64,000 bases of DNA from Mytilus californianus. Its lineage: Eukaryota. The stretch covers positions 102,858,001 through 102,922,000 of the forward strand of contig NW_026262734.1 of assembly GCF_021869535.1 (NCBI RefSeq), read 5' to 3'. Positions 3,601 through 60,743 of the stretch are shown here, piece by piece. Both the position numbers and the translations under genes were made by a program. Positions within the stretch are counted from its first letter, which is position 1. Each line of letters opens with the position of its first letter. A model generated the notes under the pieces. The model was given only the letters and a program-made list of their open reading frames with translations. It was not told the origin of the DNA and did not search any database.

Positions 3601-3611
3601 AACACACGAAT

Positions 3612-25649: not shown

Positions 25650-25721
25650 AGTTCTCGTAAATTCAAGTTGTTAGCGAAAATATTCTGCGGTAAACTATCT
25701 ATATTGTTGCCTCCAAGATCA
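25650..25721 (-). CDS. LRR exon 7 of the minus-strand LRR gene: DLGGNNIDSLPQNIFANNLNLREL
   Basis: 72 nt, ctttcttttattatag|T...CT|gtaagt, phase 2/2, no stop. Confidence 0.9.
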
Positions 25722-27850
25722 CTATAATAAAAGAAAGTTATAACAAGTTTTAGATATCTGTGCTCACTTGTACATTAGAATGTACAATTTAGATAATGCA
25801 AAAGTACAAATAAATATTGTTATTGCAAAACTAATACACAAACCCTAGCATCAAAGGAGTTCAACGAATAATCAGACAACACTTCAAACCAGTACAATGG
25901 CACAGACAACAAATAATTCTGTTTTTGATTACGAGTTGCAAACTTTGTTTTATATTTCAATTTTAGGATATGCTACTCCTTATATGTCATTGAACGTAAA
26001 CGTAAATAAATCAGATAAAAGCTAGGAATGATATGGTCAACCACGAGTCCTTATTTTATAATGATGCATCTCCTTTGACGAAGCATATCACTGTATGAGG
26101 TAAGTGTAGTATTATTGAATGATTTTTCAAATGAGAATTTTTTAATATCATTCAAATTTAAATTTACGGTATTTAGTAGCAACCGTTTTAATAAATGTCA
26201 AAATTTGTGTTATTTTTACAATACTGACTTTTAATAGAACCTAAATAATCAAATATAGGAGGTATAAAAGACAAAGGTGGTATGAAATATTACTACAGTT
26301 TTTAGATTTAGACCTTGAAATGACTTTTAACCTAATATATTGAATCATGCCGATTTTCTGTTCTGTTTTATTATCTTAAAGTACAAAAGAAGATAGATAA
26401 CGCCTGAAAGGTTACCAATTTTACTGCAAAACCAATGTCTTCTTAATAATAACCAAGGCAAAGTTATAAAAAATTTAAAGTGGCCATCTGAATTTAATCC
26501 GGATTGAAAATTCTAACATTTTTTTACCTATAAATTAAATCCTTAAATTTGATAGTGCTAAACACAACTACCAAATAGCCTGGCATTCTGTAAGATCAAT
26601 ATATAATTGAGATAGCTGCAAAGTTTAATGAAAATCCAATTTATTTGAAAAAGTGATATACATGATTAAAGGTGACTATCGTAATTTAATCAGAACGGGA
26701 AATTCTACCTTTAATTTGAAAGCAATGAACCAGACTACAAAATAACCCATAAAATATAATAATACACAAGCAGTTTGAGAAAACTATTTGTACATAGTTG
26801 ATACGGATTTGGCGAAATAGCGAAAAGTAAATGTCAAAACTAACAACACTTTTTGGACCTATGCTTTTGATCTCAATATCCCTCAAATGATGTACAACCT
26901 TTTTTGAAAATCATACTTAGTCTGAATTGCTGACCTTTCAGAAGTTCCGAAGAAATATCACTTTAACTCAACTACAAAAACGGGATTGCTTTGTTCGAAA
27001 CTACGTGCGAAATTCAAAAGATGTGACAAAACCGTTAAAAAAATGTCGATATTTTTTACGTTTAAGTAGTAGTAGTGATAACAAGGACAAGATAACAAAC
27101 TGTTATAGAGAAATATCAGTAACCATATCTTTTTAACAACTTGCCAATACATTAGAGAGAAAAATAAAATTGACTGAACATGCTGAAGCAGACAAAATAA
27201 TTCAACATCAATCTTTCAGGAAATTTAAGTGTCTTTACACCCTGAAATTCACATTAAAAAAATAGTTCATTCTGGTTTTGAAAAAAATATTCGTGTCTAA
27301 CAAAATTTTATCTTACACTGATTTCATGTAGGTTTATGTACTAATTAATGTATAATAAGATAATATGCGATTTCAACTTCTTTTGAAATGTTTCCCAGCT
27401 TTAATTAATAAGTGGAAGAAGGACTGACAAAAATCTGAGTTGTTCTATAAGAATGAGCAGATCTTGCAACACACGTTTTTATAAACGGACAATTGTAGAA
27501 AGATTGTTATAAATCATGTCAGTACCGAAGTACTGACTACTGAGTTGATGATACCCTCGGGGACTAGTCCACCACCAGAGGTATCGACCCAGTGCTGTAA
27601 AAAACGAAAACAACACGTTATTTATTTAATGCGTCCGAAGCGCTTTTCCGGTAAAATATCATTTGAATGCATGCAGTGACGACATGTTCAATCAACAATT
27701 AAAAAATCTTTTTTAATATATGTTGCGGTTACTCAGGAGTGACAATAACAATCCGGCTCTGACAGAAAATCAATGAATGCTAATCAAATGACAGTATTTC
27801 TATTGCATCTAAGTTAAAGTGGTTCACTTACATCTCATATATGAAAGTAC

Positions 27851-27918
27851 AACATTTGCAAATATTTGTTTTAATTGGATCCTCGATAATTGTAATCAAC
27901 CTTTATTGGGATAGATGG
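27851..27918 (-). pseudogene. Decayed LRR pseudo-exon (HLSQ*RLITIIEDP..., shifted to NKYLQML)
   Basis: 68 nt, 4 short of 72, with a premature stop and a weak donor (gtactt). Paralog of 23416-23882. Confidence 0.45.
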
Positions 27919-29429
27919 CTGGTATTCCAATTACAAAGGAGTAGTAAAAACCAGGTTTTTTGAGGAACAAAATGTTCTAAAATAAATGTTTGGTTTAGTG
28001 TTGTGGGATTAAAAGACCATATTAATTCTTCGATTTCATGTACGTAATATCTTATCAAAATTCTGGAAAAATGAACTACAGCACAAATAAGACACACAAA
28101 ATAAATTTGCAGAAGAAATAATATAATTGAAGATATCTGTAACAGCTTTTATTGAATTTGTAAGAGCCCAATTGTGGGTTTACGACTTTAAATATATAAT
28201 AATTTAAATTGAATGCTTTTGGTAAAATCGTTATTGTTAAGACATAACTCTTTACAGCTGACTGACATGTGGTCAAAATAAACTAAAATTACATAAGGAT
28301 ATAACAAATAATATGCCCCTACCCCCAAAAAAGATTGTTGCATGAGGAGAATTAAAAAAAGTAACAAAGCAAAACTGCCATAATTAATATAAGTATTTAA
28401 CTGTATTGAAAATCTAGATTGCACAGTCTTGTCTTATTTTAGTCCGTTTACAAACAATATGATGAAGAAGTAGTTTATTCATTAAAAAAATGTCATTGCA
28501 ACATCATCACCAAGTCATGATTTATTTTTGTTTTTCAAAAATGGCGTACTGTTTTATGAATTCAATAAAATTAACAACCTTAATTTGAAAAATATTTAAC
28601 CTAAAACAATTACTTTGAAAAACAATCAGCTCCTATACATGTACGTGGCTTATAGGTTGCATTTCTGTAAATATCAACAATGCAATTTCCCATAGGAACT
28701 CCTTTCACGGATAAAACTGTACCACTTTTAATAAGAAGTTTTGAAAAAAAATATATCCTAGAATGGAAAGTTCATATGCACTACTATTTTTTTCAAATGT
28801 CAAAATATAGGGCTGTGCGGCATATTTTCAACGTTTATATGCCCCGAACTTCTAAGAGTTTAAACTTACATTAAATTTCTATAGTACCCCAACCTTGACT
28901 TTAGGATTTCCACAGACTTCAACTTGATCACTATGAATATGTATATTTACTGGTAACATTCCCAAGTTATGTCTCTATGAGATAAAATATAGAAATCATA
29001 TCCGGGAACCAGTGCGTAAACAAAATTAATTGTCTATGAATATTATATATCTCTCCAAAAGAGGCGTGGTTTGAAAAACAGCTGTATTTACAAAGTGAAA
29101 CCTTATTAATAGGTATGTTAGGCGCGAATTTCATTTGCATAAAACTGCTTAGTAGATGAAAAAAACACTTGAGAGATGTACCTCCTTCGAAAAGATTGTC
29201 TGGGTTAACGTCAGATTGTTTTCAAATGTTTTGCTATAAGTTCTTAAAATGCAGGAATTATTATGAGCAGAAGCAACTTCGGAACATGAAGGTGATATTG
29301 TTTGATACAATGCATATGTAAATTCCATTTGAAAAGGGAAAACTACAATGTCCTAACAATACCTTATCCAATATGTAATAAAAGTTAATGTCTCTAAAAT
29401 AAAATAAACAAACTAATACAATCCAGTAT

Positions 29430-30590
29430 GATTATTTTTGGTGACATATATGAACTGCTCCAAGAAACCTCTTTCAAAATTATTCACATCAAGTTTATCA
29501 TTAAAGCTGGGCTTCAACATTATTTTGAAACTACCTAATCTAGACATGCTAGAGGCGGCGTGAACCACATGTGGATGTTTAAATTTTTTTTGAGTATTTA
29601 CCATCTAAGACTCTTTCAATCTGCAATTGTATCAAAACACTTGACTGTTTTACCCTTTACACATGTTTTACCTATTCCAAACAAAAAGATAAATTGAAAG
29701 AATGGGTTCTGCTTTGTGTCATAAAAACAAGTTTGGCCAACGTAGATACAAGTATCTTGTCTAGGGGAGGAATACATCTTACTTTGTATAAAAGTCACTC
29801 TGATTCAAAACAACAAAGCCGCTGATATTGACATTATCAAGATCCTTTATTTCTTGATTGACAACATATTTGCTACGTTTTAAAGATGTCATCTTCAACA
29901 AACAATCGGCATTCCTTCGAAAACCAACTGTTCTCCTCATCTTGATAATTTACTCCTTAATTGATATGAGACTGACTTCATACAGGAGCGTCTTGGGAAG
30001 AACGACAAGAAGCAAGCATTATCCTTAAACTCACTTGCCGCTATATAGATAATGTATTATTATCAAACAAATTAAACTATGGTTACTTTCTTCAACGCAT
30101 TTATCACATTGAACTCGAAAAAAGGATAAACACACACAGAGGTAATTCTGTTTCATATTTTCAATGAAGGCCGGTTGAGATCAAATATTTATAATAAAAA
30201 TAATGATTTCAGCTTTCCAATTGTGAACGTTCCATTTTCTGTAGCAACATACCAGAATCATTTGCAAATGAAATATATAACTTCCAAGATGTTATATGAA
30301 GATGAAATAATCCCTTCGCAACTTTAAAGGACGCCATCACGAGTTTGTGTATTCTTATGGAATATATGTTTCATAGTTGCCGACTTTTATGTTCCGATTA
30401 TCGTAACAAAAATCAATTTGTCTTTTCCCCGAATGTGGTCCATCGAATTAGACTTATCACCGGGATTGTACTTATATGAGAAAAATGACGTTGCTTTGTT
30501 GGGGTTTTTGATACTGGCGTTGTGAGTTTATTTTCGACTTTTGAGTTTGAATGTCCATTTAGTATCTTTCGCCCCACTTTTATTATACAT
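29430..30590 (+). mobile_element. Degenerate Naiad-type Penelope-like RT fragment and 3' end (paralog of 24560-25445)
   Basis: FLIDNIFATF, QTIGIP and GRHHE-like segments, followed by the family 3' tail. Confidence 0.7.
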
Positions 30591-31064
30591 GAGGACATGA
30601 GGACACTGATGTTCGTTCTGCAATCAAAAGACTAAAATGTTCATAAACAACGTCAATTTTCGTTCTTTATCTGCAACAATGAGGATCAAAACGTTGGGGA
30701 GGAACTACAGATAAATTTATTTAATGATTAATTCAAAAAATTTTAAACCTTGTTAGAAGGAATGTCCTTTCTAGCCTACGCGCGAAAACACACAGCATCC
30801 AACATTTTTGGGAAAAGCACGAGAAGCTTTCTAATGTAAAGTAAAAGCTAAATGTTCAAGGATCATCAATACAAATAAGTGTCATAGATGATCGTCTTTA
30901 TTTTGTAATGCCAAAAGAACTGCATTTGTTTCAACCATTCACTCAAATGTTTGGGAAAATGAAACATTTAGAAGACAAAATAGAAAAATAATACACTAAC
31001 TTTGGTTTTAAAAAGTAAATGCACATGCATTATTGTGCTCGATTACTTTGTTAGAAATACTTAC

Positions 31065-31136
31065 AGTTTTTGTAAATTCAAGTTGTTAGCGAAAATATTC
31101 CGCGGTAAACTATCTATATTGTTCAAATCGAGATGA
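31065..31136 (-). CDS. LRR exon 6: HLDLNNIDSLPRNIFANNLNLQKL
   Basis: 72 nt, tttttatattttgtag|T...CT|gtaagt, phase 2/2, no stop. Confidence 0.9.
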
Positions 31137-31491
31137 CTACAAAATATAAAAATTATAAAAGTTAAAAAGATATCTAGGCTCACTTGTACATGAAAATGTA
31201 CAAAAAAAATAACGCAAAAGTACAAATGAAAATTGTTATTGCATAACTAATACACAAACCCTAGCACAGAAAACAAATAATTCTGTTTTTGCTCACGAAA
31301 TGCCAATTTTTTTTTATATTTCAAATTTAGGATGTGCTACTCCTTTTAAGACATTGAACGTAAACGTAAATAAATCCAACCAAAAAAAGCTACGAATTAT
31401 ATAGTCACACATGAGACTTTATTTCATTATAATGCACCTCCTTTATTATATCTTGACAAAATGAAGCACTATATGAGGTAAAGGTAGTTTA

Positions 31492-32010
31492 GTAAAATAA
31501 GGATTTTTTCGTGCAACGTTTTCGGCCTTTTTATTTCACGTGTTTTCGTGTTTTGACGTTTTATTTTTCGTTTTCTCGTGTTTGGTTCAATGTGCGTGCT
31601 TCGTGTTTCCCCTTATTTATTTTCCGTGTTTCGTGTCGGTACTCTTAATGTCTTGTTCTTGTCCCGCAATTATTAGAAAAGTCAACAGGGACTAATTCAA
31701 AGTCAGCCCGGATATTGTATATGTATGGCATGTAATAAAATCCATCACATTACAATGAATAATATTTTTTTTTTCAAATCAGATACAACTAGCGGACGCT
31801 AAAAGGTGACCACAAGGTCTTCATGTCCGTTAACAATGATTGCATGATCTCCAAGAACGGCTGGGTAATAACTTCTATTACCTTTTCCCTTATTATTTAC
31901 GATTTTATTTCTGGTGCTTCGTGTTAGCCGATCTTTATTTTTCGTGCAACGTTTTTGCGATTTTTATTTCACGTGTTTCCGTGTTTAGACCCCCCTTTAC
32001 CACCCTCTGA
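31492..32010. mobile_element. MITE-like insertion with GTGTTT(T/C)CGTG repeats
   Basis: Absent from paralog A near 26110. Ends CCCCCCTTTACCACCCTC. Confidence 0.55.
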
Positions 32011-32753
32011 AATGATTTTTAAAAGGTAACATATTTGATTTTACTAAAATTAATTCACGGTATTTAGTAGCAACCGTTGTAATAAATCGATAAATTGTGT
32101 TCTCCTTACAAAATTGACTTAAATAGAACCTGAATAATCACAAATAGGAGCTATAAAATACAAAGGTGGTTTGAAATATTACTATAGTTATTAGATCTAG
32201 AACTTAAAATGTCTATTAACCTAATATTAAATCATTTCGCTTTTGTTTTTTCTTGTTTCATCTTACATGTGTATTCACCTCATGGAATTATCATTGGTTT
32301 AACAGCATAGAAATAGGAGTAAAAGAAAATAAATAGTTCCAAGTTTACTGTATGTAGTCCCGTTTTCAACGAATTTGTCATAAGAAAATAATTTTGATTG
32401 ATGTTTTCCAAATATAGAAAATATTGTTTTTGGTATTGTAACATTCAATACTGTAAACATATCTAGTGAATTATTTTGAAACTTATCATCTTTAACATGT
32501 GAGTGAAATATTAGTGACTTAACTTAGATACGAAAAGCATGTTTTTCAATAATTCATGACAAAAAGAGAAGTATAATTCAAACTAACCATTCTTAATATA
32601 ATTGAGATCAATAAATAATTATTATTTAACATATTCCAGTTAGAGGTGGCGTGAATCAGATGTTGATACTAAGAAAATCCAAAGAGTACATACAATCGAA
32701 GAATCTTTAATTTTACAATAGTTTTTCAGCTCTTTTCATAATGCTAGCAAGAC

Positions 32754-33018
32754 AAAGGTTTGTTTGACTTGCTTGCTTTGTTTGTATAAATGTTTGCTCA
32801 AGCATTGTAATTAAGATTGACATCTGCAAACAATATAAGTAGGCGGAGTTAAACATGTGTATAGGTAAATTTGATTATTTGATAATGTTCAATCAAATTT
32901 AAATATAATGTACACAAGTTTAATTCCGCCTTGTTATGTTGTTTTCAGATGTCAATCTTATTTACAATACTTGAGCAAACATTGATACAAACAAAGCAAA
33001 CAAGCCAAACAAACCTTT
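32754..33018. repeat. About 265-bp foldback hairpin
   Basis: Arms of about 110 bp (AAAGGTTTGTTTGACTTG... / ...CAAGCCAAACAAACCTTT) plus an inner AAATTTGATT/AATCAAATTT pair. Confidence 0.85.
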
Positions 33019-46308: not shown

Positions 46309-47510
46309 CTTCGATTTATTTGTGTTAAGAATTAATTGTTTTCCAAATTGGAAGTAATGTTTGTACAAACTGGATTATCGATAGAATGCTGAAAGGTTTA
46401 CAATAGTCTCATTTTAGCTGCATATATTAACTTTGGTAAAGATACGTCGCCATATATTACACTGAATTGTTTTGTACATGATATCAGTTACACTTAAGCC
46501 AAATATCTAAAAAGTAAAATGAAAAAAAAAAATAAATAACGAGGTTCAGGGAAAATTCAAAACTTCGTTTGGTGTGTCCTGGTGTAATGTTGTAAATTCT
46601 TCGGAGATGTCTTTTGTTATTCTGCATTTACATGTTGTAATGTACTTCTATATTATCCATTTATGCATTTCTCTGTTTTGACTGTTCTTGTGTTTGTTTG
46701 TACTGAATTCCTGTCACGCAATGTTATCATTATAGCGGTATTTTTAACATTGCCATATAAGCGGGACGTTTTGTCAGCAATAAAACAACGTTCAACTCAC
46801 CATTTTTCTTAAATAGCCCTGTACCAAGTCAGGACTTTGGCAGTTGTTATCAAATAGTACGTTTCTATGAATGTTGGCGTCTGTTTTTTTTTTTTTTTTG
46901 CAGTTCTGTGTTTCTGTTGTTTCGTTGTTTTGCTCTTATAGTTGATGTGTTTCCTTCAGTTTTAGTTTTAACCCGGATATATTTTTGTTTTATGAATTTA
47001 TCACTATCGAACAGCGATATACAACTGTTGCCTTTATGATAATGTTAATTACCATACCACCATATCAAATTTGATTTTGATCTCGAGTGAATTGAATTAT
47101 TGTGAAACATATTTTTATATTGACAATTATTTTATATTGACAATATGCAATCGATTGTTTCGATTTACAACTTATTTTACGCAATGATAATTGATATCAG
47201 AGTCAATCCTAAACACATTACCTCTCCCTCAGCTTTTACAGATTATCAAAATTAATCAGGAATAGCGAAAATAATACTTTGTTCCACAATTTTGACTATT
47301 TTTATGTTTTCAGAAATAAACAGTAGTATTAAAGTTCAGATTGTCGTAATTATGGTTAATGCATAAATAATATCCTAAGGTCGGTCGACAAATAGTATTT
47401 CAGGAATGATAAACAAACTGTGCATTGAAGATTTCTTCGAAAAAAATGAAGCTTTTAGCCAGCATCGCATTTGATAGTTTTTGGTAGCAGTTATTGATAA
47501 TCAAACTTAC

Positions 47511-47582
47511 AGTACTTGCAAAGCAACGTTGGAGGACAACAGATCAGGTGGCAAAATCGTCAAAGTATTCCTTTGGAGGAAT
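47511..47582 (-). CDS. LRR exon 5: FLQRNTLTILPPDLLSSNVALQVL
   Basis: 72 nt, ttttccttttttaaaag|A...CT|gtaagt, phase 2/2, no stop. Confidence 0.9.
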
Positions 47583-48571
47583 CTTTTAAAAAAGGAAAAA
47601 TATAATAACTTTTTAAGACATAACCAAATAAAAATACAAAATTGAAAAAAAATAAAAGTTCACGCTTCGTTAACGCCAAAATACAGAGGGAATATTTGTG
47701 CATACAAGTAATCAAAAGACAAACAACTGCAATCGATTGTTTCAAATTCTGTTAAAATACTTATATTTGTATTATTGTTTTGTCTTTAGACACAACGTAA
47801 TAGCCGGCTGTCTTCGTCTTATATTTGGGACGATATCAGAAAAAATATTCGTTGAGTGTTTAATACACATTGCATGAATTGTTTGATGTAGTCATTGTGC
47901 ATTGTAATTCACTCGAAAACACAACATGATTCTTTTCATGTCATCTCAAAGAAAAAAATCATGAATTTTATTTTTAATTCCTTTGAACTTCAAAGATAAA
48001 GGCATGGATTTTCCTCCATTGTATTGTATATTAAAATGACACAATTGTTCTCACAAACAACTTTAAAAGCATTATATTGGTTGGTCTGCCTAATAATTCA
48101 AACAAACTCTTCCCAAATGATTAAAATAGTTTCTATCTTATTGCAGTAATAAACCAGTTAGAAGACGTTCTTGACAACTCATAGCCTCTGGCCTTTGTGA
48201 TTCTTGTATGTTTTTTTTTTATTTTAGTTTAATTATGTGTTTTGGGGTTTAGTGTGACGTCCATTTTCTCTGAACTAATACACATTTTAGATAATGGGCC
48301 ATCTGAAGACCGCCTCTAGGTGCGAGATTATCTCGCTGTGTTGAACACCCATTAGTGGCCTTTGGCGGTTTTCTGCTTTTTGGTCGGATTGTTGTCTCTT
48401 TGACACATTTCCCATATCCATTTTCAATTTTATTAATATAAAGCCTATATATTCGAAAAAAATGACCAGGGCAAAGGTTTCCGATACCAACTCAAATATG
48501 AGTATAGCATTTTTTATTAGGTAAATACTATCAACAAACAACGTAAATGAATGAAGTTATGTTCTACTTAC

Positions 48572-48643
48572 AATATTATCAGTGCTACATTGTTCCTTAA
48601 AACACCATCAGGTACGCTAGTTAGATTGTTGTCGTTCAAAGAC
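48572..48643 (-). CDS. LRR exon 4: SLNDNNLTSVPDGVLRNNVALIIL
   Basis: 72 nt, tttttattctcattaag|G...TT|gtaagt, phase 2/2, no stop. Confidence 0.9.
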
Positions 48644-49924
48644 CTTAATGAGAATAAAAAAAAGCAAGCCAATGTTTACTCTTTAATGTCCTATATTTCA
48701 AACACTTACAGAATAAAAGTAGAGTTTATAGGAGATCATAATATATATATAATTACATAGAATGTGTCGATAGTAAAGGAAGAAAGAACCAGAAATAATA
48801 AGGCAATCAAAAACTAATTTTATAGCAACTAACGTATCAACTATGACAACAATATATTACCAGATCATAGACATTTCCAATAAAATGACATACGTACGTA
48901 ACTCGACGTACGGACTTAATGGGACTGTTTTTTTCCAACCATTGAATTTGTTTAAATACGTCGCTCAAGTTTAAACAAAGAATTCCAAGACAAATCACAC
49001 ACAGGAATTTTCGTTTATATAAAATAATTTTAGCATGACGAAAAATAATAGAAATCTTCCATTTTCATTTATCACGTGGTTCTCCAGATTCTTGCCTTTA
49101 GTTTCACTGACAATCATCAGATTACGTATAAACACACGTATTCCATACCTATCATACGATCGATTTGAGTTATCTTTCATGGTTTTGATTATGAAAATTA
49201 TTTTTCAATATACTTTGCAGATGAACGGCCCATTATGTTTATTTTTCGTTATTCGATGTTTTTCTTTCTTTCCTTTTTTCTTCCTTCTCTCTTTCTCTAT
49301 CTTTTTATTATATTTGCTGTTAAAGAAGGATATCATTTCTGACAATATCAGAAATATCGAAACCAGTGTTTGTCAGAATCTTTCTCTTTACAAAAGTTGA
49401 AAACTGAGATAAAACTATCGCTGCCAATTAATGTCTAAACAATAGTATTTTTCGTTCATTATAAAATGTGTTGATAAAAAATTCCCTATATTGGTTGTAT
49501 TGTAGACGGTGTGCCCGATTAAGGATTGTTCTGTGTTGTTTTGTTTTACGAGAATGTAAAGGAGTCCAAATACGAAAGACATTTCCAGGCAATTTTTTTT
49601 TTTTCAATATCCCTTGAAGCAAATTAACTTATAGTATTTTATCAATTTCATTGTCTTAAAAATAAATTATTGGGGGGGGGGGGGGGGGGGGGGGTGTCCA
49701 CAGAATTCGTGTTACTGCATAAATAATTAACGGAAATGTGTTAGGAAAGAAACCTAGAACAACATAAGATAATAAGATTTCGTTGCCAGATGCGGATCCA
49801 GGATTTTGAAAGGGGGATCTAGGCAACGTCAGAAGTAGAATATAAAATATAAGTATTACTAGGATGTAGGTTCATATATATAAATGTTCGTTGCATATGT
49901 ATTTCACATATACATATTTAGGAC

Positions 49925-50160
49925 GAGAAGATGAATATGAACCAGACTTTTTATTATACCGCAGGAAGACATGTCACCCTACTCGGACACATGATTCTGA
50001 CTCCGGACCGAGCCATCTTTGCTCTTACTCCTAAATATTGCGTGCTTGGCAGAGATGCAGTCAATCTTCGATTTGAACCGGGCGAGGATCGAGCCCAATT
50101 CTTCTCTCATTCGAGCAGTTGTGTAGCTTCCATTGACGCAATGAGGCAACAGCCTCATCA
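49925..50160 (-). mobile_element. tRNA-derived SINE
   Basis: Minus strand has a B-box-like GGGCTCGATCCTCG, then GGAGTAAGAGCAAAGA..GGCTCGG..GTGTCCGAGTAGGGTGACATGTC. Confidence 0.65.
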
Positions 50161-51589
50161 AATGTTTGACCATTAAAAAAGAGAGATAAAGAGAAAATAT
50201 ATACCGTGTATTTCATAGTATAGAATATACAGAGTGACGACGGTTCAAAACGTTGACTGCTTTTCTCTTTACTCATTCATTTCTCGTTATTAACGTCTTG
50301 AAAAATATACGTCAAACTTTCTTTCATAAAATGAACACGGTAGAGTCAAATATCTTTTTTTAAGGAACAGACAAGGTATACCTCACAAAAAAAAAAAAAA
50401 TGATTCAAACAAGATGTCATAACTGTGAATCTGACATGATGCTTGATTTCGTTTTTGGCAAACGAACTTGTTACTTTAGGTAGACGTAGTTTTAAACAGA
50501 CACAAGGCATTCCTGCATTTTATGTAGTACTCTTCCTACTGATACGTACCGTGGTTAATATAAGCAAGACTTCATAGTTCACCCAGTTATTGTATTCCAT
50601 GCATTTTGACAAAAGCTAAACGTATGAAGTTAAAAGACATAGTGGATCTTAAACTTTAATATCACTAAATATATACAAAAACATTTTAGAGGAGGTCATA
50701 CATATAATTCTGTCAATTATTTTTTGTTTTGATCAGGACCTGTCTGTAATTGAATACTGAAAAAAGTAAAATCACAAAAATACTGAACTCCGAGAAAATT
50801 ATACCTTTAACCAGCAGTTTCATTAAAATATTTTGATTTAATGCGCACTGAACATATTATTATTTCGTGATAAAATTCCACAAATCTGGATTTTTCATAG
50901 ACAGGATCTTTGTGTCTATCAAAAGTATGGTCACCTACACCCCTCCACCCTTTTTTTTGGGGTGTTTCCTTAGCGTTGCAGGATGTACCAGTATGTACTC
51001 TATAAGATTATATTCAACTTTATAACATGTTTAAAAAGGTCGTCCGTTTGGTTGTCAGGAAAGTATAAATACACAGCCACGTCTAGTAGGAGTAGTGTTT
51101 CAACAAATCTAATGTAGGTGCGTACATTAGTTCTACACGGAACAGAACCAAGGATCCATAGTGGGTCTGTAGCCATACAAAATGTTAGACCCTATGTAAC
51201 ATGCTCTTTTTTCCAGGTACAATTGAAATTTATGCTGTTATCATGGTCGACCTAGTGTACATATCTATTGTATTATTTTGTTTTACTTATCCTGAATATG
51301 CATGCACTTTTTTGTCTCTTAGTGTCCGATAACAACATTCAATTAAATAATAAATCAGACGTGTTTAAAATTATGATTTTTCTTGCATTTGTAAATGCTG
51401 AAAACTATTTTGCGATTCAGACTTTTAACTAACCATCTACTCTCTATTGGCATTGACGTATTTTAACCAAGTTGAGGCTTTGACTGCCAAAATTTAAATC
51501 ATTTGCCTCATCAGCAATGAAATCTAAGGTACGCTACTGTCGATGGATAGATAGTTGGTTGCTTAAAGTCAATGGCAAATATTTCATGC

Positions 51590-51825
51590 ATATTACACGT
51601 GCAGAGAGCGTGGCATTCTTTCTACCAGAAGCATCTAATTTAACGTCTCCACTCTGACCGGAAGTGATTGCGTAGATGTACATCCCGCACAGTCAAACGG
51701 ACGCCCCACTTTGGCAATGGTTTAACTGCTGGTCGGAACAAGACCAATAGTGACCAAATTTCTATTCCCCGGTCAGCCTGGAGGGGTTACTGTCGAGGCG
51801 AGCACGCTACCACAAGACCAAAGCG
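51590..51825 (-). mobile_element. tRNA-derived SINE (mirrored copy at about 52900-53105 on plus)
   Basis: Head TGGTCTTGTGGTAGCGTGCTCGCCTCG and body GGGAATAGAAAT..GGTCACTATTG..GTTAAACCATTGCCAAAGTGG. Confidence 0.65.
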
Positions 51826-54800
51826 ACAATAATGAAAATGGAGGATAATATACATGTACATGTATTAATCAGAACATTTGCAGCAAGAATATGTGGCTTT
51901 AAGACATCGTGCCCCTTCACATGATCATATTTCCATGTGCAGCGGACCACTAAATCCAGGTCAAACTATAAATTGGTATATACTTTTAAACGTTTTATAT
52001 TTTGAACGGAACGGAACGGAAGAACGAACGGATGAACAGACCAGTAAATATCATATCCCTTTGTTATCATAAGTTGGTCATAAAACTAAAATGATCATCC
52101 TACTTCAAAACGTCATTCAAATATTCCGTACATGTCCGTTTTTCATACGTATTTGCATAAGTTAAACGCCAAACATTTTAGAAAAGCAATTTAAGAGCAA
52201 TGAAGTTAAATTACGCATACGTTTGTACGGACTCTTCCTAGAATCAATGCATCATTATAATTAAAGACAAGAAGTAAAAATGTTAACTGATTCAGTAAAG
52301 TGTAATCATATTTTTGCTTGACGATGCGTCCTCATAATTCCATTTGGTAAAATTCTACGGAATGGTGACAAACAACTACCAGAAAGATGCATCAGTGATC
52401 TGAATTACTACCTCTAACAAAAGTTTCTTGAAACAAATAAAGAAGTATGCTAAAAAAAAAAGAAAAAACAATTCATGTACACCTTTTACATTCCGGCGTG
52501 TTTGAAACTCTTGTTTTAATCTTATAACTTATAAATAAAAAATTAGAATATCATCTCGATTCAAATTCCACTATTTTTATTTTTTGATACTTTTAAAATT
52601 TTGATTTGGTAGTTTAAGAAATCACTGTTTGAGAGATAAATATATGGGTCAAGTGAAATGATAAAGTAATGATCGGTGCATTTGATTACCGGTAACTGAA
52701 TTAGTTATTCCCTTGAAAGGTTGTTATCAATAAAATCATTTCAAATTTAATAATAAAATATGTAAAGAATGAAAATAGCAGATTACGCTAATTTTTAAAT
52801 AGCATCTGTTCCAACAAAGTATGTGTATTCAACGAGTCAAAAATCCATGCAGTCTATGCTACCTACCGTCATCCATCAATGCAATAGGCCGACATACGGT
52901 CAGATGGGTTGGTTATGCCGAGTAATGACATTTTTATTCTAAAAGATGATCAAGGGAATAGAAATATGGTCACTATTGATCTTGTTCCGTTAAACCATTG
53001 CCAAAGTGGATAGTTCGTTTAGATGTGCGGGATGTACAAGTACGCAGTCCCGTCCGTTTAGAGTTGGGACGTTAAAACCGATGACTCTTTTAGATATAAT
53101 GTCACGCTCTCTAAATGTTAATATTACATGAAATATATGCAACTGGACGTTGACCAACCAACTATCAATCAATCGACAGTAGCGTAACTTGAATTTTATT
53201 TCTGGTGAGGCAAATGATTAAAACTTGGCAGATAAAAGCCTCACTTTGGTTTAAAGACGTCAATGCCAGTAGGGAGTGGACGGTTACTTGAAAAAATGAA
53301 TCGCAAAATAGGTGTAGGTGATCATACACTTGATAGGTCAAACAATAGCAACAAGATACTATTTATGAAAAATCCAGATTTGTGGAATTCTATCATGAAA
53401 TAATATTTCTAGTGCGCATTTAATCAATATATTTCAATGAAACTTCTGGTTAAAGGCTTAATTCTCAGTATTCGGTTAAGTATTTAGAATTCAGATAGGT
53501 TCCTGATAAAAAAAAATGACAGAATTATATGTATTACCTCCTCTAAGATGATTTTGTACAGATTTGGGGATACGACTAAGTTTAAGATCCACTATGTCTC
53601 TTAACTTATACGTGTAGCTTTTGTCAACATGTATTGATGATAATAACTGGGAGAACTATTTAGTCTTGCTCATGTTAAACATGATAGAAGAGTACTACAT
53701 AAAATGTAGGAATGCCAAGTGTCTGTTGAAACTTTACCCACCAAAAGTAACAAGTTCGTTGTCAAAAAATTAAAAAAAAAAAGCAAGCATCATATCAGTT
53801 TCACAGTTATGACCTCATGTTTGGATCAGTTTTTTGCGAATTATACTTTGTCTGTTACTTAAAAAATATATTTGTATCTACCTTGTTCATTCTAAATTGC
53901 ATCTTGGATCCGCATGTGGCAACGAAATCTTAATATATAATGTTCTTCAATGTTACTTACCTTACACATTTCCGTTAATGATTTCTTCATTAAAATGAAT
54001 TCGGTAACCCCGCTTTTAGTTATTTATCAATAAAATGGATAAAATGCTCTAAATTAGTTCACTTCAAGGGATATCAAATCTATTCCCTGGAAATATCTTT
54101 TGTATTTGGACTTCGATAGCATTCCCGTTAAACAAATCAATACAGAACAATCCCTAATCGAACACACCTTAATTCTATTAAAAAAAACAACATATATAGG
54201 AATTTCGTTATCAATAAATTTTATAATAAATGAAAAATACTTTTGTTAATAAATTAAAAAGAAGCGATAATTTTATCTGAATTGTTAACATTTATAAAGA
54301 GACAGATTCTGAAAAATTCTACTTTCGATATTTCTGAAAATGTCAGAAACATATCCTTCTAAATATTTTCCCCGCATCAAATATAATAAAAAAGATAGAT
54401 AAACTATAAAGAAAGACAGAAAAAAATATAATGGGGCGTTCATCTGCAAAGTATATTGAAAAATAATTGTCATAATCAAAAACATGAAAGATAACTCGAA
54501 TCGTACGTATGATAGGTATGGGATACAATACGTGATCTTATGTCAGTAAAATAAAGGCGGGAATCTGGAAAACCATAAACGAAAATGCAATATTTCTATC
54601 ATTTTTCGTTATGATAATTTATTTTTATAGGGTCGAAAATTCCAATGTGTGATTTTAAAAGTCTTGGAATTCTTTGTTTAAACTTAAGCGACGTATTTAA
54701 TCAAACTCGATGGTTGGCAATAATCCGTCCCATTAGGTTCGTACGTCTAATTACGTACGTATGTCATTTTATTGGAAATCTCTATTATAATGTGCCTGTT

Positions 54801-55799
54801 ACTTCACAAACTAGTGCTGATGACAGCTATTTGACTTTTTTATTTCATGTTTTCATAACGTCTATTTTGCTTAATGCATGTTAATAACACCTAACTTTTT
54901 CAAGACTGTGTGTTCCCCTTCAGAAAAGTTTTAAATCATTGTAATGTTAGGTCGCTGAGGTTTTCACAAAATCATTGTATTGATCGTTGTAATTTCGTAC
55001 TATAAATTTAAATGCTGAAGAAACCTCTTATGTGTAAGTAATAAATAATATTCCCCAACAGCTTCCAAAAAGGGAAACATGATGGCATAAATGTTAACTG
55101 GATACATTTAAACTTTATACCAAACTTCACAATAAAGTACATCAACTTTTTCGTTGGCGTCTTTGTTAAATTCATGTGTAGGTTTGTTTTAATTTTTTAG
55201 TCAGTTGTGTTGTATGTCTGTGACCTATGTTTTCATAAGTTTTCGCTGCTGAATCCAAATTAAAGTCACATTAACCTATAACATCTGTTTGAGTCGCTCA
55301 CCCAATTTTGTCAATATAATGGAACTATAAACAAATGTCATACGATTAGGAGTTTAGGCTAGCTCGAACACCAGGTCTAACTCACTATTTTTTCAGAGAA
55401 TACCTTTACCAAGTCAGGAATATGACAGGTTTGTTACACTCGTTCCGTTTGTTGATGACGTTTAATTTGACAGCTTTTATTGACTTTCCCCTTTTCTAAT
55501 TTACCTAAGTATTTTTATTATACTGTTTTTTTTTAGAATAATAACAAAAATGAATCAATACACAACTTTGACCTTGCTGTACTTTAAGCAAATGTTTTCA
55601 GAAATAAACAGTAGTATCAAAGTTCAGACTGTCGTAATTATGGTTAATGCATAAATAATATCCTAAGGTCGGTCAAGAAATAGTATATCAGGAAACATAA
55701 ATAAACCTTGCATTGAATATTTCTGCGAAAAACTTGAAGCTTTTTGCCAGCATGGCATTTGATATTTTTTGGTAGCAGTTATTGATAATCAATACTTAC

Positions 55800-55871
55800 A
55801 GCAATTTCAAAGCAACGCTAGAGGTCAACAGATCACGTGGCAAAATCGTCAAAGTATTCATGTGAATGTAT
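55800..55871 (-). CDS. LRR exon 3: YIHMNTLTILPRDLLTSSVALKLL
   Basis: 72 nt, tctttcctttttattaaaaag|A...CT|gtaagt, phase 2/2, no stop. Confidence 0.9.
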
Positions 55872-56807
55872 CTTTTTAATAAAAAGGAAAGATTGATAAC
55901 TTTTTTAAAGACAGAATCAAATGTAAATACAAAAATAAAAAAAAAATAAAAGTTCACGCTTCATTTACATGATTAACGCCAAAAATAGAGAAAGTATTTA
56001 TGCATACAAGTACTCAAAAGAAAAAAAAGAGAACTGCGATCGATTGTTATTTTACGTTATAATAATTGATTTCAGAGTTAACCCTAAACACACTACTTTT
56101 CTCTCAAATATTACAGATTATCAAAATGAATCAGGAATAGCTAAAAGTAAATTTGTTCCACAATTTTGAACTATCATGTATCAACGTCACCAGAGGATTA
56201 TATAATTGATAGGATTGACATATGAAAGATAAATTGAATTATAACCGAAAGAGTGTGCTATAAGACTATTCTCATGTCTCATATCTAACGATTGCTAATG
56301 AGTGTTTTTTGTCCGTATAAACACGAGTTTTAAACGCTGTTAATAGATATAAGAAGATGAAGTATGAGTGCCAATGAGACAACTCTCCATCCAAGACACA
56401 ATTTACAAAAGTAAACCATTAAAAGTCACAGTACGGTGTTCAACACGGAGCCTTGGCTCACACCGAACAGCAAGCTATAAAGGGCCCCAAAAATGACTAG
56501 TGTAAAACCATTCAAACGGGAAAACCAACGGTCTAATCTATATAAAAAACGAGAAACGAAAATCACTTATGAACAACATCAACAAACGACAACTACTGAA
56601 CATCAGATTCCTGACTTAGGAAAGTGCAAACATGAACAGTAGTGACATAAAAAAACAAATGATGTAAATAGATTCATCTTAAAAACTTCAAACATAATCG
56701 GGTTTTGATAACGACTGAAAAGCTTCATTCAAGTAAAAAACCATGACGAATAATATACGGGTTTATCATATTTACCTAAAACAACATTTGAATTAAAGCG
56801 TGGGCTA

Positions 56808-57152
56808 ATAGTTATCAAAGGTAACAGGCTTATAATTTAATACGCCAGACGCGCGCTTCGTCTACATAAGACTCATCAGTGACGCTCAGATCAAAATAGT
56901 TAGAAAGCCAATCAAGTATAAAGTTGAAATGCATTTATGACACAAAATTCCAAAAAGTTGTGCCAAATACGGCTAAGGTTATCTATGCCTGGGAAAGAAA
57001 ATCCTTAGTATTTTGAATAGTTCATACTTTTGCAAACAGTTAATTTATAAAAAATGACCATATAATTTATATCCATGTCAACACCGAAGTACTGACTACT
57101 GGGCTGGTGATACCCTCGGGGACGAAACGTCCACCAGCAGTGGCATCGACCC
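56808..57152 (-). mobile_element. Near full-length retrozyme-like monomer (about 345 bp) with type I hammerhead (56842-56885)
   Basis: GCGUCA CUGAUGA GUC-uuaugua-GAC GAAG CGCGCG UC UGGCGU, with an A15.1-to-G change. A branched stem-loop lies at 57095-57152. Confidence 0.75.
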
Positions 57153-58239
57153 TGAAAACCTGCCTTGTCTTTGTCGCACCCAACAATCGAAAGACAATCT
57201 AAATTTTTCACATTATATGTCAAAACAACTCTAAAAAATAGCGTAAGTCACATCTCAAATCCTAGATCTGCTCATATTTTGTCAATTAGCCATACATATC
57301 AAAGGGGTATACGATGAACGGATAAAGCATTTTGGATGACCTATGTCTATTATCATAGTTTGTACATGTTGTATATTTTGAGAGAATAAAAACAGATAGC
57401 GCAACTACGTGTAATGACAACTATATTTACTATTGCCATAGTTGAAATAATGTTTGCAATTCTTTAAATTTTGTTATTTATACTTATACTTATATTACTG
57501 TCGTTAGAAAAAAACTTAATAGCCGGCTGTCTTCGTCTTATTTTTCGGAGGATATCAGAAAGCATATTCGTTGAGTGTTTAATCCAAATTGCATAAATTG
57601 TTTTATGAAGTCATTGTGCATAGAAATTCACTCGGAGACAAAACATTTTTCCTTTTATGTCTTCTTACAAAAAAAAAAATCCGGAATCCTGTTTTTAATT
57701 CATTTTAATTTCAAAGATAAAGGCATGGATCTTCCTCCATTGTATTGTATACTTAAATGACATATATTTTCTCACAAACAACCTTAAAAGCATTATATTG
57801 GGTGGTCTGTCAAATTATTCAAACAAACTCTTTCAAAATGAGTATAGACGTTTGTATCTTATTGTAGCAATAAACCATTTAGAAGACGTTCTGGATAACT
57901 CATGGCCTATGGCCTTTCTTAGTCTTGTATGATTTTTTAATTTGAGTTCATTTATATGTTTTGGAGTTAAGGGTGACATCCATTTTGTCTGAACTAGTAC
58001 ACATTTTAGTTTGGGGGCCAGCTGAAGCTCGACTCCGGTTGCGGGATTTCCTAGCTGTGTTGAAGAACAATTAGTGGTCTTGGGCTGTTTTCTGATCTTT
58101 GGTCGGATTGTTGTCTCTTTGACACATTCCCATGTACTTAGATTAAAATGTGTTTCTTTCGAAAAGAACAATTTAAACTTTTTTTAAAATCTTTTTTGTC
58201 GAAATCAAGATTTTCGCATGATTTATTTACTGACAATAT

Positions 58240-58600
58240 ATTTTCAATGTACAATTGGAAATCCGATGGAAACTCACTGTGATCCTCTTTCAACGTGATT
58301 CTTTATTCACTTGAGTCATAAGTTATACAGGGGGATTATAAGAAATCAACACAATTCTTTAACTGCGAGTTTCGCTATTTCGATACTGTCCTCTTATTTT
58401 AGGATTCGAAAGTTTGGTGACTTTGCTAAACTCAACTTCGTTATCAAACTAAAAAGGATACTGCAAAAACTTATCTAGACTTATATTTAAAAAATGATCA
58501 GGATTATTGATAACAAAGGTGTAAATCAAGATTGATGATTTCAGATTTTAATTGTGATGTTTCCATTTCTATGTAGCAACGTTGTAGCAGCGTTTCATCT
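58240..58600 (+). mobile_element. Highly degenerate Naiad-type RT fragment
   Basis: Remnants of the FRY..D.L and YLDL..DDF.F.IV.FPFLCSN segments. Confidence 0.5.
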
Positions 58601-59897
58601 ATAGCATAAATCTGCGAGAGGAAACGAAAAATAAGAGCTTTGATTTCATTTCAAATAATTCCAAAATATAGTGTAACTGCTTAAAATGAAACTTTTATTG
58701 AATGGTTCAAAGAAGTGAAAAGTTAAAAAAAAAATAATATCAAACTCCATGGATAATTAATAACGGAAAGTCCCTTATCAAATGGCAAAATAAAACTCTC
58801 AAACACAACAAACTAATAAAAAACAAATGTCATAATGAAGACTTGGTTCAGGCATTTCCGTTTGTAGAAACTGGTGGATTAATTTTGAAAATTTAACGGA
58901 TGTAATCATGAGATTTTTTTATCGTTATGGATGATCTGTGTCACTGATGACCACCAAAATGTTTCAGTTGTCGGAACAACAATCCTCTCGTCTTGTCTCG
59001 ATTGTCACATATTTTAACTAAATATTAACGAATAAGAATAGTCACTAACATGAGTTACGCGACGGGTTCCACAAATGGAACAACTAATTGCTACCTGTCT
59101 GGAGCGACTGTGATCACCTCCAGTGTAAGATTTGTATTGCTCATCTTCAGTTTTCATATGTAGTGTTGTGTACAAAGTTGTTCGTTTTCTGTTTTTACCA
59201 TTGTTTTGTCGGTTTCTGATCGACTCATGAATTATGATTGTCGCATCAATATTTGTCGTCTAAGCGCAATAACGAACTGGTTAGTATTTTTACATTCATG
59301 TTCAAATTTTCATTTACTGGTTTTAACTTGGATCAACAATTCAATGTGAACGGTTTCTCGCAAGAGTGACGTACGTCAGCAAAATGAAGATAATGTTATG
59401 ATTCATTTTTTCAATTATATAAAAAAGGTTCCTTGTTTAATCATGTATATAATCTGATGATAGTGCTCAAAACAAACACACATGCAAATAATTTTTATCT
59501 TTTTTCTCTGTCTTTCCTTTTTCTATATTATTTGTTAGTATACCTCTTTAATAACAGATGTCTGATTAGAACAATGTAATCATGAATCTGATATTTGAAA
59601 GCTTTGAATTCTATTGATCAATATTGTATCTTATGATAAGACAATCAAAGTGGGACTAAATTGTGTTTAATACTTTTTTGCAAATAAATATGTTTAAACT
59701 AAAAAGAAACTTACTTCTCATTTGTATACTTAATGTTTCTACATGAAGCCAATATGTTTGAGAAAAAAAAACAATGACCAGGGCAAAGGTTTGCAAAGCC
59801 AAAGTTGAATCAAAAGATGAGCATAGCAAATTTTTTATTGGGTAAATACTATCCTGTCAACAAACAACGTATATGATTGAAGATATGTTCTACTTAC

Positions 59898-59969
59898 AAA
59901 ATTATCAATGCTATGTTGTTCCTGAAAACACCACCAGGTACGCTAGTAAGATTGTTGTTGTCCAAAAAC
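59898..59969 (-). CDS. LRR exon 2: FLDNNNLTSVPGGVFRNNIALIIL
   Basis: 72 nt, ttttttgttcttatttag|G...TT|gtaagt, phase 2/2, no stop. Confidence 0.9.
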
Positions 59970-60671
59970 CTAAATAAGAACAAAAAAGACAAGCCAATGA
60001 TTACTCCTAATTGTCCTAGATTTCAAACACTACAGAAATACTTACAGAAAAAATGAGGCAACCAAAAAGTAATTCAATAGCAACTAACGTATTAATTCTA
60101 TCAGCAATTTATCACAATATCTGCATTCAAAAGTGCCTCTAGAAAACGAATAGTTACCAGTCGTCAAACGATGTTCTTATTTAATAAAATGATTTGAATA
60201 AACAAGGCAAAATTAAAAGTCAACATTGTCAGTGGCTGGTTGCCTTACAACAGATGTTGGTTGTCTTATGTCCTATCATTATGTGCTTGTTACTAATATA
60301 GCACCATTTTTTTTCTTTCTAGTTCATTTATTCATAACGTCTGTATTGTAAATGCATGTTATTGACATCTGGTTTTTGTCGTGGCTGTTTGTTATCCTTG
60401 TGATAAGGTTTAGTTAATTGTGATGTTTGGTCGCTCAACATGATTTCAATCCTAACATAATAGAAAGAAAATTATGAATCTTGTTTTTTTAATTCCCTTA
60501 AACTTCAAATATGTAGAAATGAATCTTATTTCACTGTATAGGTTACCAAAATGACATAAGTTCCCAAGTTGAATCATAAGATTGGGATAAGAAATTATTC
60601 ATAAGGCAAATGCTATTATCATGATTATGACAGTAAACATACTAACATGATTACAATTATTTTGAACTTAC

Positions 60672-60743
60672 AAAGATTCCAATGCCAAGTTGTTCTTGAA
60701 AACATCATCAGGTAAACTAGAAAGATTGTTGCTCGATAAATCC
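60672..60743 (-). CDS. LRR exon 1 (most 5' found): DLSSNNLSSLPDDVFKNNLALESL
   Basis: 72 nt, tttttttttatgtag|G...TT|gtaagt, phase 2/2, no stop. Confidence 0.92.

What the first reader, a model, noticed from the sequence alone, without database searches (positions are those of the whole stretch)
25650..60743. Hidden one-repeat-per-exon LRR gene: seven 72-nt, phase-2 exons over 35 kb of minus strand
Seen: seven exons of exactly 72 nt, each with a pyrimidine tract plus AG and a GTAAGT donor, and none with a stop. Spliced in order, every junction codon is Leu (TTG, TTA, CTG, TTA, CTT, CTT). The result is an unbroken 24-aa periodic array: DLSSNNLSSLPDDVFKNNLALESL FLDNNNLTSVPGGVFRNNIALIIL YIHMNTLTILPRDLLTSSVALKLL SLNDNNLTSVPDGVLRNNVALIIL FLQRNTLTILPPDLLSSNVALQVL HLDLNNIDSLPRNIFANNLNLQKL DLGGNNIDSLPQNIFANNLNLREL. 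The ORF track misses it completely. Established: this is the typical extracellular LRR class, and 72-nt phase-2 LRR exons are known from LGR/RXFP-type receptors and other LRR proteins. Inference: a cell-surface or secreted recognition protein. No signal peptide, LRRCT, TM or TIR exon was found, so the family is unassigned.
Basis: partly seen in the sequence, partly recalled or inferred. Interest (0 to 1): 0.9.

Follow-up and report, generated by a model that had tools for sequence, protein, structure and literature searches.

The report
Partial mussel LRR gene, one-repeat exons
Seven small exons spread over 35 kb of a mussel genome really do encode seven consecutive leucine-rich repeats of a cell-surface-type binding protein, but this gene layout is well known, the gene's ends are not in the window, and the one RNA data set I could lay on three of the exons showed no expression.

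Summary
Observation confirmed. Seven minus-strand exons are each exactly 72 nt, with pyrimidine tract-AG before and GTAAGT after. All are phase 2 and stop-free, and all six junction codons are Leu. A profile of the repeats scores 43-49 bits on these seven places and at most 7 bits elsewhere in the window.

Joined exons 1-3 pass Pfam LRR_8 (53 bits, cut-off 27). All seven joined model as one unbroken solenoid (pLDDT 97.7). It superposes on LRRTM2 and hagfish VLR (TM 0.95-0.98).

The array grew by tandem duplication of exon-plus-intron units. Duplicated exons have no indels, while their intron flanks have many. Framework codons give dN/dS 0.23 and ligand-face codons 1.63. So this is, or recently was, real coding sequence.

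- No signal peptide, cysteine cap, TSP1 or 7TM-sized exon was found in the window. TM, TIR and Ig exons were not searched for. The family stays unassigned.
- An RNA-seq run from the genome's own study shows zero depth on exons 1-2 and no junction reads.
- No matching protein turned up in the public sets.

The 72-nt phase-2 LRR exon is documented elsewhere. Unchecked notes from this scan report similar arrays on other DNA of this genome (s1-340015, s1-302513). This is a new member of a known kind, of low interest.

The parts
60672..60743 (-). LRR exon 1 (72 nt, phase 2; repeat DLSSNNLSSLP...)
   Evidence: 43.1 bits; AG acceptor and GTAAGT donor. It is a 74% nt copy of exon 2 with similar flanks.
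59898..59969 (-). LRR exon 2 (72 nt, phase 2)
   Evidence: 49.4 bits. It is the paralogue of exon 4, 86% nt identity. X2 DNA contig record 13 spans it.
55800..55871 (-). LRR exon 3 (72 nt, phase 2)
   Evidence: 46.0 bits. It is the paralogue of exon 5, 83% nt identity.
48572..48643 (-). LRR exon 4 (72 nt, phase 2), duplicate of exon 2
   Evidence: 46.2 bits. The unit 47304-48713 matches 55592-60037 at 82-85%, introns included.
47511..47582 (-). LRR exon 5 (72 nt, phase 2), duplicate of exon 3
   Evidence: 46.2 bits
31065..31136 (-). LRR exon 6 (72 nt, phase 2)
   Evidence: 43.1 bits. The unit 26765-32265 matches 22203-26378 at 70-82%.
25650..25721 (-). LRR exon 7 (72 nt, phase 2), duplicate of exon 6
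   Evidence: 44.9 bits; 86% nt identity to exon 6
47304..60037 (-). Tandem duplication of a two-exon cassette (ex2+ex3 and ex4+ex5). The older copy's intron is swollen by repeat insertions.
   Evidence: self-blastn; one search shows very high-copy repeats at 56150-57150, 57950-58150 and 58750-58950
22203..32265 (-). Tandem duplication of a one-exon unit of about 4.5-5.5 kb (ex6 unit and ex7 unit)
   Evidence: six colinear matches at 70-82% identity

Best explanation
These are seven consecutive internal coding exons of a mussel (mytilid) gene for an extracellular-type leucine-rich-repeat protein. Each exon holds one 24-residue repeat. All introns are phase 2, so ordinary splicing strings the exons into one curved solenoid. 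Its beta strands straddle the exon junctions, and its concave face would bind a ligand (inferred).

The array was lengthened by repeated tandem duplication of exon-plus-intron units: ex1 from ex2, ex4-5 from ex2-3, and ex7 from ex6. After duplication the framework residues were kept while the concave-face residues changed fast. That pattern is expected of a recognition or adhesion molecule, possibly an immune one (inferred).

The 5' end (signal peptide, N-cap) and the 3' end (C-cap plus whatever follows) were not recognised in the window and probably lie beyond it. Domain family and expression are therefore open.
For: - Exon anatomy and junction codons are shown directly.
- Only these seven places score with the repeat HMM.
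- Joined exons 1-3 pass LRR_8 at 53.1 bits, E 2.7e-14.
- The repeat profile hits VLR, repebody, LRRTM, Nogo receptor and LRG1 chains down to E 3.6e-21.
- The AlphaFold2 model with a 35-row alignment has pLDDT 97.7 and pTM 0.92. Its strands sit at 23-25, 47-49, up to 143-145, that is across every junction.
- Foldseek gives LRRTM2 at TM 0.95-0.97 with rmsd 0.6 A, and hagfish VLR-A at TM 0.98.
- Duplication units include the introns.
- Selection on length: 0 indel events in 216 exonic nt against 19 in 856 flanking intronic nt, P=0.008.
- Selection on residues: 13 of 21 residue changes fall on the five x positions of LxxLxLxxN, which I fixed a priori (P=8e-5). 16 of 21 fall there once the post-LP position is added.
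- NG86 dN/dS is 0.23 for framework codons and 1.63 for face codons.
- A Mytilus galloprovincialis LRRNT+LRR gene (P0001, locus L001) also uses 72-nt LRR exons and shares transposons with the window.
Against: - RNA-seq run X4 comes from the same study as the genome's DNA run. About 1.55 Gb (roughly 6% of the run) was read. Depth was 0 over exons 1 and 2, about one read part fell in the bin holding exon 3, and no ex1-ex2 or ex2-ex3 joints were listed.
- No near-identical protein or ORF appeared in the word-indexed search of 5.8 billion proteins, at length ranges covering 52-292 aa.
- None appeared in the top 150 of 1.84 billion representatives. An identical sequence would score 323 bits and rank about 40th.
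- No signal peptide, LRRNT, LRRCT, TSP1 or EGF motif and no large ORF was found on the minus strand of the window.
- Overall nucleotide identity of duplicated exons (83-86%) is no higher than that of the nearest intron sequence. The case for constraint rests on the indel contrast and on where the changes fall, from only three exon pairs.
Confidence: 0.7

Rival explanations
1. It is a silent or dying copy. The exon array is a remnant or dispensable duplicate of an LRR gene that is no longer transcribed. It still looks intact because it stopped working recently.
For: - Zero RNA depth on exons 1-2 and no junction reads in X4.
- No matching protein or transcript-derived ORF in public sets.
- No terminal exons recognised in 25.6 kb downstream and 3.2 kb upstream.
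- The introns are loaded with transposon relics.
- Exon nucleotide identity is about equal to intron identity.
Against: - All seven exons keep exact length, an open frame, AG and a perfect GTAAGT, at 14-26% divergence from their paralogues.
- Exons have no indels where the introns have about one event per 45 nt.
- Framework dN/dS is 0.23.
- One RNA sample of unknown tissue, sampled at about 6%, cannot detect expression that is low, tissue-restricted or induced.
Confidence: 0.2
2. It is the ectodomain of an LGR/RXFP-type G-protein-coupled receptor, as hinted by the 72-nt phase-2 exons.
For: Phase-2 single-repeat LRR exons are the classic layout of gonadotropin receptor and LGR genes (PMC11378527). 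LGR4 structures appear among the fold matches (ranks 36 and 45).
Against: - The longest stop-free stretch on the minus strand of the window is 139 aa, so no large 7TM exon is present.
- The repeat profile ranks VLR, LRRTM and Nogo receptor first. LGR4 appears only as an LGR4-VLR chimera at E 5.5e-5, and FSHR, LHR and TSHR do not appear at all.
- The same exon layout occurs in unrelated LRR genes, so it is not diagnostic.
Confidence: 0.03
3. It is a bank of VLR-like cassettes that are copied somatically into an incomplete receptor gene, rather than spliced.
For: The repeats resemble lamprey and hagfish VLR modules in sequence and fold. The cassettes are dispersed and diversified at the binding face.
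Against: - Every cassette carries a complete canonical acceptor and donor in one shared phase. All are colinear on one strand, which is what ordinary splicing needs and what gene-conversion cassettes do not.
- The host is a mollusc.
- An unchecked note from an earlier follow-up in this scan reached the same negative conclusion for a sister array (s1-340015).
Confidence: 0.01

Closest known systems
Mussel secreted LRR-TSP1 gene with a 72-nt exon array
   Same: Same genome. One LRR per 72-nt exon, recent tandem amplification, and fast change at ligand-facing residues, according to those notes. I did not check them myself.
   Different: It lies on another piece of the genome. That gene was reported complete, with about 30 exons and a TSP1 part. 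Here there are only seven exons, no TSP1 motif in the window, no dead exon copies and no expression evidence.
Mytilus galloprovincialis hypothetical LRRNT+LRR protein (P0001; contig UYJE01000137.1)
   Same: It was the only database hit in the 92-292 aa length range. It has 72-nt LRR exons (for example L001 17933-18004) and a similar '...F-x-x-N-[VIL]-x-L' second half of the repeat.
   Different: Identity is only 29% over 46% of the query. It is a different gene, and it has an LRRNT exon that the window lacks.
Gonadotropin receptor / LGR genes, and brown-alga ROCO and LRR-kinase genes
   Same: One LRR per exon, with all introns in phase 2 in both groups; 72-bp exons are documented for the brown-alga genes, where exon duplication or shuffling is the growth mechanism (PMC11378527; PMC3341825). 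Tetrahymena LRR genes do the same with 90-bp phase-2 exons (PMC6564038).
   Different: They have other domain partners (7TM; ROC-COR or kinase), none of which is seen here. The brown-alga repeats are cytoplasmic types, whereas these are the LxxNxLxSLPxxxF 'typical' extracellular type.
LRRTM2, Nogo receptor and jawless-fish VLR ectodomains (solved structures)
   Same: Best matches in both sequence profile and fold: 24-residue typical repeats, TM 0.95-0.98, 31-38% identity.
   Different: All of those have cysteine caps at both ends. VLRs are assembled by somatic gene conversion. The similarity is at the level of repeat class and is not orthology.

Membership tests
Typical (extracellular-class) LRR, Pfam LRR_8 | Score above the Pfam gathering threshold for the joined peptide | tested here: met
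   Exons 1-3 joined score 53.1 bits against 27, E 2.7e-14. Single exons alone are sub-threshold (18.8 bits), as expected for 23 aa.
Typical (extracellular-class) LRR, Pfam LRR_8 | 24-residue period with LxxLxLxxNxLxxLPxxxF and a continuous solenoid fold | tested here: met
   Alignment A1 consensus; AF2 pLDDT 97.7 with one strand per repeat; TM 0.95-0.98 to LRRTM2 and VLR.
Typical (extracellular-class) LRR, Pfam LRR_8 | Signal peptide and cysteine-rich LRRNT/LRRCT caps | tested here: inconclusive
   No cap motif was found on either strand of the window. There was no match to the LRRNT of P0001. The gene ends are probably outside the window.
LGR/RXFP-type GPCR | 72-nt phase-2 single-repeat exons | tested here: met
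   The feature is not specific to this family.
LGR/RXFP-type GPCR | Rhodopsin-type 7TM domain downstream of the LRRs | tested here: not met
   The longest stop-free minus-strand stretch in the window is 139 aa. Only the window could be tested, so an exon beyond it is not excluded.
Lamprey-type VLR cassette system | Cassettes without splice signals, joined at the DNA level | tested here: not met
   All seven carry AG and GTAAGT in one phase. DNA contigs of X2 show the unjoined genomic form.
Mussel LRR-TSP1 genes (s1-340015) | Thrombospondin type-1 repeat exon(s) after the LRR array | tested here: inconclusive
   No WSxW / CSxTCG motif was found in any frame of the window. The 3' end is not in the window.
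Toll-like receptor | TM segment plus TIR domain | not tested
   No HMM scan of all small minus-strand ORFs was run. Only ten large ORFs were scanned, and one RVT_1 was the only match above its curated cut-off.
Expressed, spliced gene | Junction-spanning RNA reads | tested here: not met
   X4 shows 0 depth on exons 1-2 and no 702-nt or 4026-nt skip among the joints listed. This was one run, about 6% sampled, of unknown tissue, covering exons 1-3 only.

The most novel reading that the evidence does not exclude
The array is a combinatorial splicing device. All exons are 72 nt and phase 2. Any forward pairing of a donor (TT or CT) with an acceptor first base (G, A or T) gives Leu, or Phe in six pairings, at a framework position. 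Any subset could therefore be spliced into a valid solenoid, giving a mussel a Dscam-like repertoire of LRR receptors with different lengths and binding faces from one locus.
Probability: 0.06. Interest if true: 0.65.

Novelty: new member of a known kind. Interest (0 to 1): 0.22.

Why it matters
If the gene is expressed, it adds one more fast-diversifying LRR recognition gene to the large innate-immune and adhesion repertoire of bivalves. It also shows cleanly how such arrays grow, through duplication of exon-plus-intron units followed by change confined to the binding face. It does not open a new question. The exon layout, the growth mechanism and the selection pattern are all documented in other lineages, and unchecked notes from this scan report the same in this genome. 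Its practical value is as an annotation fix: a gene that ORF-based tracks cannot see.

Tried and rejected
- **Further LRR exons in the window.** HMM scan of all six frames found none. The candidate at 44962-45033 has no splice sites.
- **Terminal or partner exons.** I ran regex scans for LRRNT, LRRCT, TSP1 and EGF. I checked all minus-strand GTAAGT donors for an open phase-2 frame. I ran tblastn of the M. galloprovincialis LRRNT protein against the window. Nothing was convincing.
- **Database identity.** Three word-indexed searches with the joined peptide (167, 96 and 95 aa) gave one weak hit. The exhaustive phmmer search was swamped by giant multi-repeat proteins from metagenome contigs at 30-42% identity, which are probably bacterial and uninformative about family.
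- **Single-sequence AlphaFold2.** It gave only pLDDT 64 and was replaced by a run with an alignment. That alignment consists of those unrelated LRR proteins, so the high confidence shows repeat-class compatibility only.
- **Neighbouring windows.** The findings index could not be queried outside 1-64000.
- **Rfam and tRNA scans.** Both were empty.
- **Not done.** I did not run a Pfam scan of all 171 minus-strand ORFs of 50 aa or more, because too many references would have gone into one call.
Full report
**1.

The exact exons are:

| Exon | Coordinates |
|---|---|
| 1 | 60672-60743 |
| 2 | 59898-59969 |
| 3 | 55800-55871 |
| 4 | 48572-48643 |
| 5 | 47511-47582 |
| 6 | 31065-31136 |
| 7 | 25650-25721 |

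Each is exactly 72 nt. Each follows a T-rich tract and AG, and is followed by GTAAGT. Each reads as one base, 23 codons and two bases, so every intron is phase 2. The six junction codons are TTG, TTA, CTG, TTA, CTT and CTT, all Leu. Introns measure 702, 4026, 7156, 989, 16374 and 5343 nt.

Chance is excluded:
- An HMM built from the repeats and run over every stop-free stretch of all six frames scores 43-49 bits on the seven exons. It scores no more than 7.1 bits anywhere else.
- Seven random open 23-codon frames in this composition have P about 3e-6.
- GTAAGT occurs only 24 times on this strand, against about 22 expected, and seven of those close these exons.
- DNA contigs of run X2 reproduce the assembly over the exon 2 and exon 3 regions with 0-1 differences. 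Two contigs together cover exon 1.

**2. What the exons encode**

Aligned, the repeats give xLxxNNLTSLPxxxFxNNxALxx, with N5, P11 and L21 invariant. With the junction Leu this is the LxxLxLxxNxLxxLPxxxF 'typical' 24-residue class.

- A profile of the seven repeats searched against all PDB sequences finds designed consensus LRRs, LRRTM, variable lymphocyte receptors, repebodies, LRG1, Nogo receptor, LRRC15 and Toll, down to E 3.6e-21.
- A single exon is too short to pass Pfam (18.8 bits). Exons 1-3 joined pass LRR_8 at 53.1 bits against a cut-off of 27.
- The seven joined exons folded poorly as a single sequence (pLDDT 64). With a 35-row alignment (A2) the model reaches pLDDT 97.7 and pTM 0.92.
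- That model has one short strand per repeat at residues 23-25, 47-49, 71-73, 95-97, 119-121 and 143-145. Each strand straddles an exon junction.
- It superposes on LRRTM2 (TM 0.95-0.97, rmsd 0.6 A) and hagfish VLR-A (TM 0.98).

The alignment rows are unrelated multi-LRR proteins. The model therefore shows that the joined product is a regular, unbroken solenoid of this class, and nothing more specific.

**3. How the array arose, and whether it is under selection**

Self-comparison shows that whole exon-plus-intron units were duplicated in tandem:
- 47304-48713 matches 55592-60037 at 82-85%, so ex4-5 is a copy of ex2-3.
- 22203-26378 matches 26765-32265 at 70-82%, so the ex7 unit is a copy of the ex6 unit.
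- 59799-60294 matches 60563-61029 at about 70-75%, so ex1 and ex2 are an older pair.

The nucleotide identity of duplicated exons (83-86%) is no higher than that of the nearest 200 nt of intron (78-91%). Plain conservation therefore does not argue for function. Two other signals do.

- **Indels.** The three exon pairs have no indel event in 216 nt. The 150-nt flanks have 19 events in 856 aligned nt, giving P=0.008.
- **Position of changes.** Of 21 residue differences, 13 fall on the five x positions of LxxLxLxxN, the concave face, which I fixed a priori (P=8e-5). With the residue after LP added, 16 of 21 fall there. The five changes elsewhere are F-L, I-V, I-L, T-S and S-N.
- **Rates.** NG86 gives dN/dS 0.23 for framework codons and 1.63 for face codons.

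The sample is small, only three pairs. Still, the pattern is that of a working LRR binding protein whose face diversifies. It is not that of free decay.

**4. What is missing**

No other exon of the gene could be recognised.
- There is no LRRNT, LRRCT, TSP1 or EGF motif.
- No further open phase-2 frame sits ahead of a GTAAGT.
- Nothing matches the LRRNT exon of a M. galloprovincialis relative.
- No minus-strand stop-free stretch exceeds 139 aa, so no large 7TM exon is present.

Exon 1 has an acceptor and exon 7 a donor, so the gene must continue on both sides. Only 3.2 kb of the window lies upstream. The 25.6 kb downstream includes repeats and tandem arrays. The ends are most likely outside the window.

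**5. Expression**

One search for runs and one laying of reads were allowed. I laid 55750-61740 (exons 1-3) against four runs:
- X4: raw RNA-seq reads from the same study as the DNA run X2. About 1.55 Gb was read, roughly 6% of the run.
- X1 and X5: contig sets labelled RNA.
- X2: unlabelled contigs that hold 94% of the stretch's sampled words, read here as DNA.

In X4, depth is 0 in every bin holding exons 1 and 2. It is 0.13+0.29 in the bin holding exon 3, at most one read pair. No 702-nt or 4026-nt skip is among the joints listed. All RNA depth sits on intronic high-copy repeats at 90-95% likeness, which means it comes from other copies.

It is one sample of unknown tissue, thinly sampled, and blind below a few TPM. 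It also gives no support for expression. Exons 4-7 could not be tested.

**6. Database identity**

The joined peptide has no reference, so I entered it as letters copied.
- Word-indexed searches at three lengths (candidates 92-292, 53-168 and 52-166 aa) found no near-identical protein or transcript-derived ORF.
- The only hit was a 29%-identical partial LRRNT+LRR protein of Mytilus galloprovincialis.
- The exhaustive phmmer search gave 25,044 hits. The top 150 are proteins of 683-7992 aa at 30-42% identity. The ten I looked up are nameless proteins from ENA and NCBI contigs, probably bacterial.
- An identical sequence would score 323 bits and rank about 40th, so no near-identical representative is present.

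The M. galloprovincialis relative, fetched as L001, also encodes its LRRs on 72-nt exons. Its contig shares transposons with the window at 80-89% identity. This fits the 'mussel' label that I first took from earlier scan notes.

**7. Comparison with what is known**

Single-repeat, phase-2 LRR exons are documented for gonadotropin receptors; 72-bp ones are documented for brown-alga ROCO and LRR-kinase genes, where exon shuffling and alternative splicing were proposed as diversity generators (PMC11378527; PMC3341825). Tetrahymena LRR genes use 90-bp phase-2 exons (PMC6564038). From my own knowledge, not checked here, Slit genes also use 72-bp LRR exons.

Notes from this scan, which I did not check, describe other such arrays in this genome. 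One is a complete LRR-TSP1 gene (s1-340015). The two duplications and the face-biased divergence at this very locus were also noted before (s1-342917, s1-342967, s1-342871). I re-derived those three independently.

Family membership:
- Membership in LGR, TLR or LRR-TSP1 families cannot be claimed, because the defining partner domains were not found.
- A VLR-like DNA-assembly system is contradicted by the complete splice signals on every cassette.

**8. Verdict**

The interpretation as part of an extracellular-class LRR gene is well supported by sequence, fold and selection. Transcription, splice order, cellular location and family remain unproven.

It is a new member of a known kind, found repeatedly in this genome, and of low interest. 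The one more novel possibility is combinatorial use of the fully interchangeable exons. Nothing excludes it and nothing supports it.

Noticed in passing
window 5713-7050 and 11631-12960: Two direct copies of about 1.34 kb at 99.2% identity, 5.9 kb apart. Between them lies a 168-nt tandem repeat of 4.7 copies at 9711-10498. This looks like the LTR pair of a recent, probably non-autonomous, retroelement, or a very young segmental duplication.
   Followed up: no
window 56150-57150 (intron between exons 2 and 3): An extremely high-copy repeat. Summed DNA word depth reaches 5.5 million against about 45 for single-copy sequence, and it is read on both strands in RNA. DNA contigs join 57152 back to 56807 with 8-9 extra letters, so the unit of about 346 nt is tandemly arrayed elsewhere in the genome while it is single here. 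A 79% copy lies at 3611-3903.
   Followed up: partly
window 40361-40840 (+): A reverse-transcriptase fragment (RVT_1, 44.8 bits) inside the 16.4-kb intron between exons 5 and 6. It is a retroelement relic on the opposite strand.
   Followed up: partly
window 20593-21055 and 17572-17889: A minisatellite of period 54/107 nt (8.6 or 4.3 copies, 72-77% matches) and a 34-nt tandem repeat (9.3 copies) downstream of exon 7. The first lies inside the stretch that another note reads as derived from a Bel/Pao integrase (s1-342918). I did not check that reading.
   Followed up: no
window bins 55750-55949, 59550-59949, 60550-60749: Summed DNA depth in X2 is 2-9 times the single-copy level (90-412 against about 45) in bins that hold or adjoin exons 1-3. 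RNA-labelled contig run X5 shows depth 6.4 in the exon 3 bin. Near-identical copies of these stretches, or short repeats beside them, may exist elsewhere.
   Followed up: no
L001 15039-15152 (M. galloprovincialis UYJE01000137.1): The public gene model of P0001 uses a 114-nt exon whose last 24 residues are a normal LRR and whose first 14 residues (MHVPVICLCLFFCR) look like read-through of the pyrimidine tract. The true exon is probably 72 nt with an acceptor further downstream, which would make this an annotation error in the public record.
   Followed up: no
window exons 1-7, repeat positions 17-19: The second half of the repeat reads F-x-N-N-[LIV]-x-L instead of the usual F-x-G-L-x-x-L of typical LRRs (compare the consensus lines). 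The M. galloprovincialis relative has F-S-A-N-V-I-L. This may be a signature useful for finding the rest of this mussel family.
   Followed up: no
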